From assembly GCA_011109175.1 (NCBI GenBank), contig RDEW01000012.1:1032552-1096551 (forward strand): a stretch of 64,000 bases of DNA, in the 5' to 3' direction. The stretch comes from Dicyema japonicum (Eukaryota; Animalia; Dicyemida). Shown piece by piece: positions 3,101-8,879 of this stretch. The notes under the pieces were generated by a model, which was not told the DNA's origin, did no database searches, and saw nothing but the letters and a program-made list of their open reading frames with translations. Positions within the stretch are counted from its first letter, which is position 1, and each line of letters starts with the position of its first letter. A program made the position numbers and the translations under genes.

Positions 3101-3909
3101 TCTGTTATGATTGATGAAAGTAAATTTGTGGTCATAAATTTATTGAATAATATATGGACAACAGTAGATCACGTGATTGATATAAAAAAATTCAACATTG
3201 AAAGACAGAACCTGATATTGCTCATTTCAGGCTGAATATATAGAACAAGCTAAGAAACACTGTTTTATATGTTCAAGTGTTATACACAATAATTCCATAA
3301 TTGATCATTGAAAAAAAGGATTTTTTTCAAAAATGTGGGTATCCTAATTACTCCTTTGAAACAAAGATTTCTTCCTAGTGTATCCTTAAAATCGGAATAT
3401 CCCGTAAATTTTTTTAATTAACTCTTAATCCTTTTCGTATTTTATAAAAACATAAATAAGTTAATGTGATGACGTTGTTCACCCACGAAATGTCTTTAGG
3501 TCTTCAAGATTGATGTGACCCCTCGTCCTTAATGTTAACAGATGAAATGATGATGAGTCAACGTCTTACACACAAATATTTTATTTAGAATCGCATTAGC
3601 CCAAATTATGGAATGTTGAGGAGGTACCGTTAGCAGTGAGAAAAAAGAAGGAATCTAATAATATATGTCGTATAACAAGTCGTAAATTCGAGTAATGTAT
3701 GAATGGACAACTAAGGCAGCCATAGAAATCAACCACTAGCGGATATGATTAATGGTCCGTTTAAGATAAGAACAAATCATAAATTGATTCTCTTTTTTTA
3801 TGAGGCAAATTTAATGAAATAAAAGTTATAAAAACATAAATAATTAATTTATCGATAATTTAATGTCAAACAAAAATTGAGATAAATTTTTTTACCCATT
3901 AACAGAAAA

Positions 3910-4944
3910 ATGAGAAAAGTATTAACGCTCTTTAATCTTTAGTTCAGAGTAGCTGTAATAGGAGCACATGGGGGAGTTGGACAATCCACGTGTCTTCTTT
4001 TGAAATGCAACTGCGACTTAATAAGCGAACTCAATTTACTGGATATTGTCGATCCTAAGGGAATTGCCTTAGATTTGTCACATATTCCGAACAAATGCAA
4101 GGTCAGAGGATTCGTGTCCCAGACGAAGTGGAAGAAGGATTAACTGGAGTTGATTTTGTTCTGTTCTGTCTTGAAAAAGGGAAAATCAAAAGACATACAA
4201 GATCAAGTTTATTTTATGGGAATGCCCCCTTGTGGAAGAACATATGAATAGTATTGCCAAATATTGCCCATCAGCCATGGTGGCCTTCATCACGAATCCA
4301 GTAACTCCCATTATTTATGCAGGTTAATTCACTAGTTCCATTGGCTGTCCAAGCGTTAGCCAATAATGGAGTCGACGGGTCCAGAAGAGTGGTAGGAGTT
4401 ACGACTCTAGACCTTATAAGAACAATCTCGTTCGTTTCCGATATGCTAGTTTATTAAAATTGTGACTTTTCAAGGATATCGAACCATCCGAGGTCACAAG
4501 CACTGTTATGGGGGGACATTCCGGTCAGACTATAACAGCAATTATTACGGACGGAAATTTTACAGAGTCAGAAAATGCAGATCTCTGCGAAAAAATCAGA
4601 GATGCCGGATTTGCGGTTTATATTGCCAGAAATAATGTTTTGATGATTATTGACTGGTGTAGGTATCCTCTACATTGGGGATCGCTGCAGCCGGTTTTAG
4701 AATTACGCAATCAATCCTCTCAGGTTTAAACGGTGACCCGAATGTTGTTGATACTGCTTTTGTAAAGTCTAATCTCACCCGAACGTCTTATTTTTCTTCC
4801 CCAGTTCGTTTTGGAAAGGAAGGAGTCGAAGAAATCTTCCCATTACCAAAATTCACTAAATCACAGGAAGAAATGCTGGAAAAGTCACTTCAGTCAATTG
4901 AACAGGAAATTCAAACTGGCCTCGATTATTTCAATAAATCATGA
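3910..4944 (+). CDS. MDH2-type malate/2-hydroxyacid dehydrogenase, copy A
   Basis: VAVIGAHGGVGQ, DLSHI, ITNPVNS, GVTTLD, GGHSG, YFSSPVRFGKEG. Introns 3919-3942, 4301-4322, 4449-4474, 4637-4662. Two 1-nt homopolymer deletions relative to copy B. Confidence 0.9.
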
Positions 4945-5087
4945 AACCACAACTTTTAATTATCAACTAATTACTAAAAATCACATTTTGGTCAAATTAA
5001 TTTATTAATTCATTTTATAACAATGCTATTTATTTTAATATTCTAAAAATTAAGATCACACCCCTTTCAACATTAACCATTTTTTTA

Positions 5088-5222
5088 CCGTGTGCCTCCA
5101 TGTGGTACTGCGTGGCTAATTGGTTAAAATTCTCTGTTTGTTTGTCTGTTCCATCTCTCTCTACCTACTAGAGTGTGTCCAGTGCCAGGCCGGCACGAAA
5201 AAGTATCATTTTCTCTTCCTCG
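5088..5222 (+). mobile_element. SINE-like family copy (internally deleted)
   Basis: Aligns with 25792-25984 and 35095-35292 (atgtggt..cgtggctaattgg; gtgccaggccggcacgaaaaag). Confidence 0.7.
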
Positions 5223-5899
5223 CTCAATATCAATATCGAGGATTATTTAATTAGTCGAAGGTTTGATATTATAGTTTATTATTACACGAGTGACCCGTCA
5301 TCAGTGGACTCTCACTGCGGAACTGGATTGTCTAGAAAGGACCCACACACAAGAAAAAGAAAATAGAAGTGAAGATCATTCCTTGGTTCTACGATTAGTT
5401 AAAATTAACTGTTTTTTATTTAAATAAAGTGTGTGTCCTGCCTATGCGGAGATAATACCACGGCTCCGTGAAAAGGCTGTTATTATTATTATTACCTACT
5501 CTCTGAGAGGGTGTTAAAATGGTAGATGTAGAACTTTATTATTTATTATTCATTTATTAATTCCTAACAATAACAGAAAAGTAACTCTTAAAACTAGACG
5601 CTCACAAAAGTCGCTCAGGGTTATGTGTGTGACCTAAACACGAAAAGACAAAGAATAGTGAAAACTGGATACCCTTTTTCGGTTTATTGGAAATTATTAA
5701 ATAAATATTCATATTAAAAATTAGACTATATTTGTTAGTTAAACACACAAACGAGAAAACTTAACTAATTAATATAATTTGTATTAACTCCATGCGTCAA
5801 AAATTAATACGACTCAGAGTATTTAGTTCCCACCATCACAAAAGTAATGTCCTTCCAATGGCACACTAATCCATCATCCCACAGAAAGGGAAAAAATGT

Positions 5900-6085
5900 C
5901 AAGTATTGCAGTTATTGAAACTCCCACGGTAAATTGGGGGAGAGCAAATAATCTTTTTTATATAACCAAGGCAATGAGCGGTACCTGAGACAAGTGGACC
6001 ACATGACGTTACTCGAGGAGAAAAGGAAGAAAAGAAATAGAAGAATGAAAAATCTTCAACCAAGAGCCACATGACACCAAAGTAA
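5900..6085 (-). mobile_element. SINE-like family copy
   Basis: Reverse complement aligns with the family (gtggctcttggttgaag...cgtcatgtggtccacttgtct...atttgctctccccca). Confidence 0.65.
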
Positions 6086-6821
6086 TGTTCCAAGAAGTTG
6101 GAAATCAGCATCTCAGCTCCAGGGGTATCCAAACCTCAGCTAGGGCGAATCGGAAATCGTCTTGTCATACCAAGTCGAATGCCCTCTCAACAAAACACAT
6201 CTATAAAATAATTTTCATTGAAGCGTTGACAAACTGTGAGACTGAATCTTTCATCAAATTCTTTCCCAACTTTATATATTTCTTAATTAATTTATTAGCA
6301 TTTAATACTCTGTTTGTTTTCTGGAATGCTCAGTTTCAAACCTAAATCATTAATTTTCAAAGTTTTGCATATCCACCTCCGAAAAGCACCATTTGTAGGA
6401 ATCAAGCATTAATTGATCGGAAGGATAATATGGTGACGTTTCTGCCCACGAAATGTCTTTAGGTCCTTAAAATTAATGTGACCCTTCGTCCCCATTTTAA
6501 GTCATCTGATACAAAAAGTTTGAAAAACTGAGTTAGCGTGGACACACAAATGTCTCGATTCGAATCTCGTTAGCCCCAAATTAGAAAAAAACTGAGCAAG
6601 ATAATTCTGCATTGAAAAGGAAAAAGGTATAACCAGTTGTAAAATTTAGTGATGTATGACTGAGCTACTACGTCAGCAATAGAAATCAATCCTTAGGAAA
6701 TCTCCAACCTTTGTCAAACAAAATTAATGAAATAAAAGTTATAAAAACATAAATAATTAATTTAACGATAATTGAATGTCAAACAAAAATTGAGATAAAA
6801 TTTTATACCCATTTAAAGTAA

Positions 6822-7856
6822 ATGAGAAAAGTATTAAAGCTCTTGAATTCTTCGTTTAAGGTAGCTGTAATTGGAGCACATGGGGGAGTTGGACAATCCA
6901 CCAGTCTTCTTTTGAAATGCAACTGCAACTTAATAAGCAAACTCAATTTACTGGATATTGTTGATCCTAAGGGAATTGCCTTAGATTTGTCACATATTCC
7001 AAACAAATGCAAGGTCAGAGGATTCGTTGTCCCAGACGAAGTAGAAGAAGGATTAACCGGAGTTGATTTTGTGCTGTTCTGTCTGGAAAATGGGAAAATC
7101 ACAGGACATACAAGATCAAGTTTATTTTATGGGAATGCCCCCCTTGTGGAAGAACATATGAATAGCATTGCCAAATATTGTCCATCAGCCATGGTGGCCT
7201 TCATCACGAATCCAGTAACTCCCATTATTTATGCAGGTTAATTCATTGGCCCCATTGGCTGTCCAAGCGTTAGCCAATAATGGAGTCGACGGGTCCAGAA
7301 GAGTGGTAGGAGTTACGACTCTAGACCTAATAAGAACAATCTCATTCGTTTCCGATATGCTAGTTTATTAAAATTGTGACTTTTCAAGGATATCGAACCA
7401 TCCGAGGTCACAAGCACTGTTATGGGGGGACATTCCGGTGAGACTATAACAGCAATTATCAGGGACGGAAATTTTAATGAGTCAGAAACTGCAGATCTCT
7501 GCGAAAAAATCAGTGATGCTGGATTTGACGTTTATAGAGCCAGAAATAATGTTTTGGTAATTATTGACTGATGTAGGTGTCCTCGACTTTGGGGATCGCT
7601 GCAGCTGGTTTTAGAATTACGCAGTCGATCCTCTCAGGTCTAAACGGTGACCCGAATGTGGTTGATACTGCTTTTGTAAAGTCTAATCTCACCCGAACGT
7701 CTTATTTTTCTTCCCCAGTTCGTTTTGGAAAGGAAGGAGTCGAAGAAATCTTCCCATTACCAAATTCACTAAATCACAGGAAGAAATGCTGGAAAAGTCA
7801 TTTCAGTATATTGAACAGGAAATTCAAACTGGCCTCGATTATTTCAATAAATCATG
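6822..7856 (+). CDS. MDH2-type malate/2-hydroxyacid dehydrogenase, copy B
   Basis: Tandem paralog of 3910-4944 with shared upstream and 3' flanks. Introns 7215-7236, 7363-7388, 7551-7576; intron 1 acceptor altered; one homopolymer deletion near 7763; stop TGA 7854-7856. Confidence 0.9.
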
Positions 7857-8879
7857 AAACCACAACTTTTAATTATCAGCTAATTACTAAAAATCACATT
7901 TTTGTCAAATTAATTTATTAATTCATTTTATAACAAAACATCTACAGTGGGTAAAATAAGTCACGGCAACCCTTACATAAATTCAAAATTTTACTTTTTT
8001 AACAGAATATAACATATTTCAACTTAATGTAAAATATTTAAGATTTAAATAACTGTTCTCTGTAAAAGTTTAATTTTTTAGTTGATTCACCATTTTTTAT
8101 CGATGTGAATCTCAATTTCTCTGTTTCGTGATTTTTAAGTGGAATAGTCATGGAATATTCTTGTTTTGAACTATTTTTGTTTTATTCGCTCCAACAAGTC
8201 AATTAGTAAATTAATTATTCATTTACATGATTACATTTGCAATTTGTTCTCGTGTAGATTTTATTATGCCAATGTAGAGTACAAAATAACCATGTCCGAA
8301 TTTGAGAACATTCATTAAATCCACGAGCAAATATTACGAGAACATGAAGATGTCAAAGGATATAGAAGGCTTTTGAACACTTTAATTTTCCAATCAGCTC
8401 AATTAGAACATTATTATAAAGATAAATCGATTTGGTAACAGCATTATGCTTGGAAGAGGCTGATATCAGTTATTTTTAAATCTGAGAAAATGGTACATGA
8501 GTTTAAAACAAGGCTTGAAAGACAAAACAGTTGTCTCTGAGAAAAGCTGGAATTTTGTTGGCGAACAGCTAAGAAACACACATATGGCACAGAATTTCTG
8601 CAGGTAAAATACCAAATAGACCCAACTATAGACATTGTGCAGGCTCTAACGAACTCACAAATTAATTATCTCCTGTTTAACATAAAAAAAAACAAAAGTC
8701 TCTATTCAATATTATTTGAATTATTTGAAATGATACATTTGACATACAATCATCGTCTACATGGATTACGAAGAGAGATATTTCACCAAATGCTGAAGCA
8801 TGTTCTTTCTCCGGGATCTTGGTCTAAAGTGCCCACATTGCAATACCTCAAAAACAGTCGATCATATGGCCACGAGGTG

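What the first reader, a model, noticed from the sequence alone, without database searches (positions are those of the whole stretch)
3910..7856. Tandem MDH2-derived enzymes with a rewritten specificity loop: candidate independently evolved LDH/2-hydroxyacid dehydrogenase
Seen: catalytic Asp/His (TTLD, GGH) and two substrate arginines (HTR, LIR) are kept, but the near-invariant loop PAGVPRKPGMTRDD is CLEKGKIKRHTRSS in copy A and CLENGKITGHTRSS in copy B. The specificity Arg (Arg81 in E. coli MDH, position 102 in LDH numbering) aligns to Lys, and three paralog differences cluster in this short loop. Known: loss of this Arg accompanies MDH-to-LDH switches in apicomplexans (Lys102) and trichomonads. 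Inference: a neofunctionalised pair from the mitochondrial MDH clade, possibly with different substrates.
Basis: partly seen in the sequence, partly recalled or inferred. Interest (0 to 1): 0.8.

Follow-up and report, generated by a model that had tools for sequence, protein, structure and literature searches.

The report
Dicyemid MDH2 paralogues without specificity arginine
Two neighbouring genes (plus a third elsewhere) in the parasite Dicyema japonicum are intact, expressed, selectively maintained offshoots of mitochondrial-type malate dehydrogenase that keep the catalytic residues but have lost the arginine that recognises malate, so they are good but untested candidates for an enzyme with a new substrate in a genome where no lactate dehydrogenase was found.

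Summary
Window 3910-4944 (copy A) and 6822-7857 (copy B) are a tandem pair, 2913 bp apart and about 94% identical. Both are mitochondrial-type MDH genes with 22-26 nt introns.

- **Loops:** they read exactly as reported, CLEKGKIKRHTRSS in A and CLENGKITGHTRSS in B.
- **Catalytic residues:** R109, D168, R171 and H195 are kept.
- **Organism:** Dicyema japonicum. Copy B is 318/320 identical to GenBank BAH29733.1, named "malate dehydrogenase", so the gene itself is already on record.
- **Apparent lesions:** none survives checking. Copy A's in-frame TAG is the 3' end of a conserved 24-nt first intron. A spliced transcript contig lacks both copy A frameshifts. The GenBank protein reads through copy B's frameshift.
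- **Selection:** dN/dS among the three copies (the third is on contig C190) is 0.13-0.23.
- **Genome inventory:** there is a canonical MDH2 with a presequence-like N-terminus and an MDH1-type gene. No L-LDH or opine dehydrogenase was found.
- **Family:** the pair belongs to a dicyemid-specific paralogue clade whose loop is progressively remodelled. It includes an orthologue on a dicyemid-like contig in an octopus assembly.

Neofunctionalisation is well supported. LDH activity is unproven, and loss of the near-invariant Ala-Gly before the loop also leaves weakened cofactor binding possible. Another note of this scan (s1-567187) reports an MDH lacking this arginine elsewhere in the genome.

The parts
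3797..5027 (+). Duplication unit A: about 110 bp upstream, the gene, and about 85 bp downstream
   Evidence: Direct-repeat families D1-D5 with 2912-2914 bp spacing. Pairwise alignment with unit B.
3910..3918 (+). Copy A exon 0 (Met-Arg-Lys)
   Evidence: ATG followed by a GT donor. Inferred from the homologous first intron in the C316 paralogue and the octopus-contig orthologue.
3919..3942 (+). Copy A first intron, 24 nt, GTATTA...TTTAG. Its terminal TAG is the apparent 'stop at codon 11'.
   Evidence: Sequence. The TAG is confirmed in a DNA contig (X1 record 1). The orthologue on L026 has the same in-frame terminal TAG in a 30-nt intron at the same position. Splicing of this intron in copy A was not seen in the reads, so it is inferred.
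3943..4300 (+). Copy A exon 1: Rossmann motif and specificity loop. The assembly lacks one T after 4114 and one C in the run 4225-4229.
   Evidence: Transcript contig X5 record 26 carries both extra bases together with copy-A-specific loop letters. The extra T is also in the only DNA contig covering that place in each of X1, X2 and X3.
4167..4208 (+). Copy A specificity loop, CLEKGKIKRHTRSS
   Evidence: The A-specific bases at 4178, 4189 and 4191 are unchanged in transcript contig record 26.
4301..4322 (+). Copy A intron 1, 22 nt, GTAAC...GCAG
   Evidence: 'Left out 22' at 4301 in the X5 contig of depth 1356. Removing it restores ...TNPVNSL....
4323..4448 (+). Copy A exon 2 (TTLD, LIR)
4449..4474 (+). 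Copy A intron 2, 26 nt
   Evidence: X5 loose ends at 4447 and 4474 join the two exons.
4475..4636 (+). Copy A exon 3 (GGHSG)
4637..4662 (+). Copy A intron 3, 26 nt, GTTTTG...GTAG
   Evidence: The frame is restored only if it is removed, and the donor is conserved in all three copies. Splicing is implied by the 320-aa GenBank protein for copy B.
4663..4944 (+). Copy A exon 4 with TGA stop (4942-4944)
   Evidence: X5 record 27 (4693-4853) matches with no differences, so copy A is transcribed.
6710..7940 (+). Duplication unit B
6822..7214 (+). Copy B exon 1. The homologue of the first intron has lost its acceptor (TAG became TCG) and is read through as coding.
   Evidence: Open frame of 139 aa. 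100% identical to residues 1-131 of BAH29733.1.
7080..7121 (+). Copy B specificity loop, CLENGKITGHTRSS
7215..7236 (+). Copy B intron 1, 22 nt
   Evidence: Identical to copy A's intron and absent from the GenBank protein.
7237..7362 (+). Copy B exon 2
7363..7388 (+). Copy B intron 2, 26 nt
   Evidence: X5 loose end at 7361.
7389..7550 (+). Copy B exon 3
   Evidence: X5 record 31 (7447-7552) matches with no differences, so copy B is transcribed.
7551..7576 (+). Copy B intron 3, 26 nt
7577..7857 (+). Copy B exon 4 with TGA stop (7855-7857). The assembly has 3 A at 7762-7764 where copy A has 4.
   Evidence: BAH29733.1 continues in the copy-A-like frame through this site and carries the B-specific residues Phe and Tyr downstream of it. 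No laid read settled this site.

Best explanation
Copies A and B, with a third copy on contig C190, are intact, transcribed genes of Dicyema japonicum. Each encodes a 310-320-residue enzyme without a mitochondrial presequence, so it is probably cytosolic.

The genes descend from a dicyemid-lineage duplication of mitochondrial-type MDH2. They keep the hydride-transfer machinery: His195/Asp168, Arg171 for the substrate's C1 carboxylate, Arg109, the Gly-rich motif and the Asp for NAD. They have lost the Arg102 that pairs with oxaloacetate's second carboxylate.

The most likely function is an NAD(H)-dependent 2-oxoacid/2-hydroxyacid dehydrogenase whose preference has moved away from oxaloacetate towards a monocarboxylic 2-oxoacid. 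Pyruvate is the obvious candidate, because no LDH or opine dehydrogenase was found. The loop is still diverging between the tandem copies: copy A gained Lys, Lys and Arg.

Shown here: gene structure, expression, purifying selection, residue pattern, family history and the genome inventory. Inferred: catalytic competence, cellular location and substrate.
For: - **Identity and fold:** PDB best hits are human and pig MDH2. The AF2 model has pLDDT 94.4 and TM 0.93 to MDH2 and glyoxysomal MDH.
- **Residues:** R109, D168, R171, H195, the Gly-rich motif and NPVN are kept, with no Arg at position 102.
- **Intactness:** transcript contig X5 record 26 lacks the 22-nt intron and both copy A frameshifts, and its six other differences are all synonymous. 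Other contigs match A and B exactly. BAH29733.1 is 318/320 identical to the copy B model, including the C-terminus.
- **Assembly quality:** the assembly merges PacBio RS II and Illumina data (PMC6736024).
- **Selection:** omega is 0.13-0.23 at dS 0.14-0.19. In the A lineage, 3 of 4 replacements are in the loop, against 11 synonymous changes.
- **Redundancy:** there is a canonical MDH2 with a 23-residue basic N-terminal extension on C356, and an MDH1-type gene on C113.
- **Possible gap to fill:** the best L-LDH model hit is MDH2 itself, and there is no opine dehydrogenase.
- **Age of the arginine loss:** the orthologue on L026 also lacks R102 and keeps the catalytic residues. The clade has support 100 and 96.
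- **Family membership:** the score is below the curated cut-off of the MDH equivalog model, 253.9 against 273.05.
Against: - No enzyme assay exists.
- The Ala-Gly before the loop is conserved in at least 90% of 60 aligned homologues, and the Gly stood at that place in each of the 116 of 150 top hits that a loop-pattern scan could read. It is Leu-Glu here, which could weaken NAD(H) binding or catalysis.
- The Gly of GSATLSM is deleted.
- Lys at 102, and copy A's new Arg, might still allow some oxaloacetate turnover.
- Absence of LDH rests on an assembly that its authors rate at 76-77% complete.
- The tool guessed run X5 to be DNA. I call it RNA because its contigs are spliced and its depth sits on exons only.
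- Splicing of copy A's first intron was not observed.
- Copy C190 carries Arg171 to Gly and two indels in the assembly.
Confidence: 0.5

Rival explanations
1. They are still malate dehydrogenases: a cytosolic isozyme set in which Lys102 (and copy A's extra Arg) still binds oxaloacetate. The loop changes would be tolerated drift in a fast-evolving parasite.
For: - They are named MDH in GenBank, and TIGR01772 is by far the best family.
- All catalytic residues are kept.
- Dicyemid proteins evolve fast in general. Even the canonical MDH2 is only 52% identical to its best relative.
Against: - An MDH1-type gene and the less diverged presequence-less paralogue C316, which has a canonical loop, already exist.
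- R102 was lost independently in the C2 lineage (to Ser) and in the L026/C24 lineage.
- The score is below the MDH equivalog cut-off.
- Copy A's replacements concentrate in the loop.
- From general knowledge of the family, replacing Arg102 in MDHs strongly lowers oxaloacetate use.
Confidence: 0.2
2. They are catalytically weakened or dead pseudoenzymes, kept for a non-catalytic role such as binding, scaffolding or abundance. Loss of the Ala-Gly motif and of the GSATLSM glycine would have crippled cofactor or substrate handling.
For: - Leu-Glu replaces a near-invariant Ala-Gly.
- The branch to this clade is long, 1.16 against 0.47 for the sister orthologue.
- The conserved Pro of TIxPL is replaced and a Gly is deleted.
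Against: - His195, Asp168, Arg171, Arg109, Asn140, the Gly-rich motif and Asp53 are all retained under omega of about 0.2. That is not expected if catalysis were dispensable.
- The predicted fold is confidently that of an MDH.
Confidence: 0.15
3. They are recently dead pseudogenes: an in-frame stop plus frameshifts in every copy.
For: The assembly as it stands has a TAG and two frameshifts in A, one frameshift in B, and a TAG, two indels and R171G in C190.
Against: - The TAG is an intron end shared with the orthologue.
- The frameshifts are absent from transcript and DNA contigs and from the GenBank protein.
- All are single-base indels, mostly in short runs of one letter, in a PacBio/Illumina hybrid assembly.
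- Omega is 0.13-0.23.
- Both copies are transcribed and spliced.
Confidence: 0.04

Closest known systems
GenBank BAH29733.1 / UniProt B9ZYX0_DICJA, 'malate dehydrogenase [Dicyema japonicum]'
   Same: It is the same gene as copy B: 318 of 320 residues identical, with the same loop and the same exonised N-terminus.
   Different: The record only carries the name MDH. I found no paper in the searchable library that links Dicyema with malate dehydrogenase. The tandem partner, the third copy, the paralogue family and the loop change are not described there.
Mitochondrial, glyoxysomal and E. coli-type dimeric NAD-MDH (human MDH2 2DFD/4WLE, pig 1MLD; NCBIfam TIGR01772)
   Same: Same fold (TM 0.93), 36-38% identity, and the same catalytic His/Asp, Arg171, Arg109 and NAD motifs.
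   Different: No Arg102, and Pro-Ala-Gly is replaced by Cys-Leu-Glu. There is no presequence, and the score is below the equivalog cut-off.
Convergent LDHs derived from MDHs (apicomplexan LDH, PMC4109310; 'at least four times', bioRxiv 10.1101/2023.06.21.545977; Trichomonas LDH from cytosolic MDH, from my own knowledge)
   Same: Duplication of an MDH in a parasite, loss of the role of Arg102 (apicomplexan LDHs also carry Lys102), retained catalytic residues, and a remodelled specificity loop.
   Different: - The parent clade differs: mitochondrial-type MDH2 in an animal.
- There is no five-residue insertion and no Trp107f equivalent.
- Activity is untested.
- The Ala-Gly motif is also lost.
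Other mitochondrial-type MDH homologues without Arg102 in the databases (for example Perkinsus chesapeaki KAF4670955.1 with Gln; a metagenomic protein with Met)
   Same: Same clade, with the specificity Arg replaced.
   Different: They are unrelated lineages, keep the Ala-Gly (or Ser-Gly) motif, and are also uncharacterised.

Membership tests
Mitochondrial/gamma-proteobacterial-type NAD-malate dehydrogenase (TIGR01772, EC 1.1.1.37) | Ldh_1_N plus Ldh_1_C two-domain fold of the dimeric MDH type | tested here: met
   Pfam hits in the genome. PDB sequence hits at 214 bits. AF2 model with TM 0.93 to 1SEV, 1MLD and 2DFD.
Mitochondrial/gamma-proteobacterial-type NAD-malate dehydrogenase (TIGR01772, EC 1.1.1.37) | Score at or above the curated equivalog cut-off | tested here: not met
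   253.9 bits against a cut-off of 273.05.
Mitochondrial/gamma-proteobacterial-type NAD-malate dehydrogenase (TIGR01772, EC 1.1.1.37) | Specificity Arg (Arg81 in E. coli MDH, Arg102 in LDH numbering) in the mobile loop | tested here: not met
   Lys in the ungapped alignments, or Gly in the register suggested by the L026 orthologue. No Arg in either register.
Mitochondrial/gamma-proteobacterial-type NAD-malate dehydrogenase (TIGR01772, EC 1.1.1.37) | Catalytic His195/Asp168, Arg171, Arg109, Gly-rich NAD motif and Asp53 | tested here: met
   GGHSG, TTLD, LIR, HTR, GAHGGVGQ and LLDI are all present.
Mitochondrial/gamma-proteobacterial-type NAD-malate dehydrogenase (TIGR01772, EC 1.1.1.37) | Near-invariant Ala-Gly at the end of the strand before the loop | tested here: not met
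   The A88 and G89 columns are at least 90% conserved in 60 homologues. The Gly stood at that place in each of the 116 of 150 hits that a loop-pattern scan could read. These genes have Leu-Glu.
Mitochondrial/gamma-proteobacterial-type NAD-malate dehydrogenase (TIGR01772, EC 1.1.1.37) | Mitochondrial presequence (needed for orthology with animal MDH2) | tested here: not met
   Only 5 residues (A) or 13 residues (B) precede the first strand. The canonical C356 gene has 23 basic residues there. No targeting predictor was run.
Mitochondrial/gamma-proteobacterial-type NAD-malate dehydrogenase (TIGR01772, EC 1.1.1.37) | Oxaloacetate/malate oxidoreductase activity | not testable with these tools
   Needs an enzyme assay.
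Canonical L-lactate dehydrogenase (TIGR01771) | Family score at or above the cut-off, and Gln102 | tested here: not met
   73.3 bits against a cut-off of 303.55. Position 102 is Lys.
MDH-derived convergent LDH or 2-hydroxyacid dehydrogenase (a functional class, not one clade) | Arises by duplication inside an MDH clade, while a bona fide MDH is retained | tested here: met
   Tree: the paralogue clade has support 100 and is sister to the D. japonicum MDH2 with support 86. MDH2 and MDH1-type genes are present.
MDH-derived convergent LDH or 2-hydroxyacid dehydrogenase (a functional class, not one clade) | Specificity Arg lost or displaced, with catalytic residues conserved under selection | tested here: met
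MDH-derived convergent LDH or 2-hydroxyacid dehydrogenase (a functional class, not one clade) | Pyruvate (or other monocarboxylic 2-oxoacid) reductase activity with poor oxaloacetate use | not testable with these tools
   Needs recombinant protein kinetics.

The most novel reading that the evidence does not exclude
Dicyemids lost canonical LDH and rebuilt a pyruvate (or other 2-oxo-monocarboxylate) reductase from mitochondrial-type MDH2. This would be a fifth independent MDH-to-LDH transition, the first inside animals and the first from this MDH clade. The intermediate steps would survive as living paralogues, from a canonical loop (C316), to loss of Arg102 (C2 and the L026 orthologue), to full loop and Ala-Gly remodelling (C24 and C190). 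The tandem copies A and B would already be diverging in substrate range.
Probability: 0.25. Interest if true: 0.8.

Novelty: new variant of a known kind. Interest (0 to 1): 0.6.

Why it matters
The LDH/MDH pair is a textbook system for how enzyme specificity evolves, and each independent MDH-to-LDH switch has used a different structural solution. A further case would have several useful properties:

- It would be in an animal.
- It would come from the mitochondrial-type clade.
- A graded series of paralogues is still present in one small genome, and an orthologue exists in a second species. That gives a ready set of natural intermediates for kinetics and structures.

It would also say something concrete about the energy metabolism of dicyemids, which live in cephalopod renal sacs and for which no LDH or opine dehydrogenase was found here.

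On the practical side, the work shows that several apparent frameshifts in this public assembly are artefacts. It also shows that a dicyemid contig is annotated as an octopus protein in a public database.

Tried and rejected
- **Pseudogene pair.** This was my first reading at about 55%. I rejected it after the read lay-out, the GenBank protein, dN/dS and the intron explanation of the TAG.
- **Ciliate-type genetic code (TAG as Gln).** I considered it because of the tiny introns.
- **A 20-nt version of intron 3.** It would start at GTAATT in copy B. Copy A lacks that donor, whereas the 26-nt GTTTTG...TAG form works in all copies.
- **A 15-nt first intron in the C2 gene.** I left it as coding, since the segment is in frame and very short.
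- **Clustering of A/B differences in any 6-codon window.** This is not significant (p about 0.27). Only the test on the predefined loop and the polarised A-lineage test are.
- **Literature.** A search for Dicyema plus malate dehydrogenase found no papers. The life-cycle expression paper and the body-plan paper mention no dehydrogenases.
- **Joined spliced models.** I sent none to any search or folding tool. Exon 1 was searched by reference, and the database protein P0001 stood in for the full length. Joined models, with N at each assembly break, were built only inside scripts from the stored files, for local alignment, dN/dS and the tree.
Full report
**What is there**

The window is contig C24:1032552-1096551 of a 67.5-Mb, 377-contig genome. 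Two direct repeats of about 1230 bp lie 2913 bp apart, at 3797-5027 and 6710-7940, and are 89-97% identical. Each holds one gene of the LDH/MDH superfamily.

Table-11 ORF listing breaks each gene into pieces. The pieces join perfectly once GT...AG introns of 22, 26 and 26 nt are removed. The resulting protein aligns end to end with human and pig mitochondrial MDH.

So are the kept TTLD, LIR, HTR and GGH motifs.

**Organism and prior record**

An exhaustive profile search with exon 1 of copy B, given by reference, found one protein below E 1e-30 among 1.84 billion cluster representatives. That protein, P0001, is GenBank BAH29733.1 / UniProt B9ZYX0, "malate dehydrogenase [Dicyema japonicum]", 320 aa. 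It matches my spliced copy B model at 318 of 320 positions.

The genome paper gives the same size and scaffold number. It also reports a mean intron of 38 bp, 1.24% heterozygosity, and an assembly merged from Illumina/Platanus and PacBio RS II/Falcon (PMC6736024). An earlier survey of 40 D. japonicum genes with very short introns (Ogino et al. 2010) is cited in PMC6543705 and is the likely source of the GenBank entry; that link is my inference. So the gene is on record, but only under a name.

**Are the genes broken?**

As assembled, the copies show these lesions:
- Copy A has an in-frame TAG at 3940-3942, a missing T after 4114 and a missing C in the run 4225-4229.
- Copy B has a missing A at 7762-7764.
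- The third copy on C190 shares the TAG and has two further indels.

I first favoured decay. Four lines of evidence reverse that.

1. *The TAG is an intron end.* It terminates a 24-nt GT...AG segment directly after codon 3.
   - The C316 paralogue has an obligatory 23-nt intron at this position.
   - The orthologue on L026 has a 30-nt intron there that also ends in an in-frame TAG.
   - In copy B the acceptor is TCG, and the segment is read through as coding, as the GenBank protein confirms.
2. *Reads contradict the copy A frameshifts.*
   - Run X5 is from 2017. Its depth sits on exons only and it has spliced contigs, so I take it as RNA although the tool guessed DNA.
   - It gives a 359-nt contig over 4051-4429 that carries the copy-A-specific loop letters and lacks the 22-nt intron. 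It has the extra T and the extra C.
   - Its six remaining differences are all synonymous.
   - The extra T is also in the only contig covering that place in each of the three DNA runs from the assembly's own sample.
   - Loose ends show that intron 2 is spliced in both copies. Error-free contigs show that both A and B are transcribed.
3. *The GenBank protein runs through copy B's A-run.* It stays in the frame that copy A has, and it carries the B-specific Phe and Tyr downstream.
4. *The copies are under purifying selection.* Pairwise dN/dS among A, B and C190 is 0.13-0.23 at dS 0.14-0.19. Breaks were filled with N, never with real letters.

The lesions in A and B are therefore assembly artefacts or rare alleles. 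C190 additionally shows Arg171 to Gly and remains uncertain.

**Family and genome inventory**

The genome holds exactly three copies of this gene type. Pfam and NCBIfam scans of the whole genome, followed by manual modelling, give the following inventory:
- a canonical MDH2 on C356, with loop IPAGVPRKPGMTRDD and a 23-residue basic N-terminal extension;
- an MDH1-type gene on C113;
- a presequence-less paralogue on C316, with a nearly canonical loop (VPRKPDMLRND);
- an inverted pair on C2, with loop ICAGIMSSKIDSRKD;
- the three C24/C190 copies.

The best match to the L-LDH model is MDH2 itself (58 bits against a cut-off of 304). No opine dehydrogenase domain was found. Absence is limited by an assembly that its authors rate at 76-77% complete.

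The second-best database hit, annotated as an Octopus sinensis protein, lies on a 500-kb contig with 23-32-nt introns. Once modelled, it is a full-length gene with loop ICAGEKGVPGTTRADLF.

A maximum-likelihood tree of 61 full-length sequences gives (Dj MDH2, (C316, (C2, (L026 gene, (A, B, C190))))). SH-aLRT support is 86, 100, 91, 96 and 100. The paralogues share an intron after NPV and a four-residue deletion that MDH2 lacks.

Three conclusions follow:
- The family arose within dicyemids from MDH2.
- Loss of Arg102 predates the split of two dicyemid species, and happened separately in the C2 lineage.
- The D. japonicum C24 branch is 2.5 times longer than its sister branch.

**What the residues say**

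Kept: the Gly-rich motif, the NAD-specifying Asp, Asn of NPVN, Asp168, Arg171, His195 and Arg109.

Lost: Arg102; the Ala-Gly before the loop, which is at least 90% conserved in 60 homologues, with the Gly standing at that place in each of the 116 of 150 hits that a loop-pattern scan could read; the Gly of GSATLSM; and the Pro of TIxPL.

The protein scores 253.9 bits on the MDH equivalog model, below its cut-off of 273.05. It is still confidently predicted as an MDH fold, with pLDDT 94.4 overall, 73 in the mobile loop, and TM 0.93.

Polarised with C190, copy A has 4 unique replacements and 11 unique synonymous changes. Three of the four replacements are in the loop: Asn to Lys, Thr to Lys, Gly to Arg. 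By my calculation, the chance of at least 3 of 4 falling in a predefined 14-of-307-residue segment is about 4e-4. All three are changes to A within 16 nt, so a single complex mutation cannot be excluded. The changes are present in RNA of an independent sample.

**Interpretation**

The pattern matches known MDH-derived LDHs, which have arisen at least four times and do not always use position 102. Apicomplexan LDHs also carry Lys102 (PMC4109310; bioRxiv 10.1101/2023.06.21.545977).

The elements of that pattern here are:
- a retained parent enzyme;
- loss of the dicarboxylate-binding Arg;
- conserved catalytic residues;
- purifying selection;
- expression;
- no presequence;
- no detectable LDH.

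I therefore favour an NAD(H)-dependent 2-oxoacid reductase with non-oxaloacetate preference (0.5), with pyruvate the leading but unproven substrate. The rivals are a residual MDH (0.2), a weakened or non-catalytic protein because of the lost Ala-Gly (0.15), and pseudogenes (0.04).

Arg102-less members of this MDH clade also occur elsewhere, for example in Perkinsus chesapeaki. The phenomenon is therefore a new variant of a known kind and not a new category.

**Method note**

Exons were given by reference, and P0001 was used for the full length. Joins were made only inside scripts from the stored files.

Noticed in passing
L026:5950-7250 (contig VCDQ01002911.1 of assembly GCA_006345805.1, 'Octopus sinensis'): A complete MDH2-like gene with 23-32-nt introns sits on a 500-kb contig of an octopus assembly. 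It is annotated as the truncated octopus protein XP_036355024.1, 'malate dehydrogenase, glyoxysomal-like'. The intron sizes and the tree position indicate a dicyemid symbiont contig in the host assembly.
   Followed up: partly
window 5140-5571: The spacer between the two copies holds a very high-copy repeat. Summed contig depth reaches about 2.6 million, against about 700 for unique sequence in run X1, with many internal joints and variants.
   Followed up: no
L003:1465-2500 (G000:C190:587034-588067): The third copy has the same loop as copy B. In the assembly it has a 1-nt deletion and a 1-nt insertion about 80 nt apart, bracketing the TTLD motif, plus Arg171 to Gly. It is either a real pseudogene or a poorly polished stretch. 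An X5 transcript contig shows CCCC where C190 has CCC.
   Followed up: partly
L004 and L005 (G000:C2:272583-273580 + and 265568-266569 -): An inverted pair of another MDH2-like paralogue lies about 6 kb apart. Its loop is ICAGIMSSKIDSRKD (Ser at position 102), with a 24-nt intron inside the loop. The second member shows 5 gap positions relative to the first in the assembly.
   Followed up: partly
L007:1150-2300 (G000:C316:264700-265700): This presequence-less MDH2-like paralogue has a nearly canonical loop. The assembly has a 1-nt frameshift inside the conserved GVAEDLSHI motif (GG read as G), another likely homopolymer error.
   Followed up: partly
window 6831-6860: In copy B the homologue of the first intron has lost its acceptor (TAG became TCG). 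It is translated as eight to ten extra N-terminal residues, confirmed by the GenBank protein. This is a recent intron exonisation that differs between tandem copies.
   Followed up: yes
G000:C341:95605-95862 and C313:365037-365261: Two short matches to the C-terminal part of the cytosolic MDH model lie outside the MDH1-type gene on C113. They may be fragments or unrelated LDH/MDH-like domains.
   Followed up: no
P0129, P0011, P0099, P0108, P0013: Mitochondrial-type MDH homologues from other organisms carry Gln or Met in place of the specificity Arg. One is Perkinsus chesapeaki KAF4670955.1 and the others come from metagenomes or run assemblies. All are uncharacterised.
   Followed up: partly
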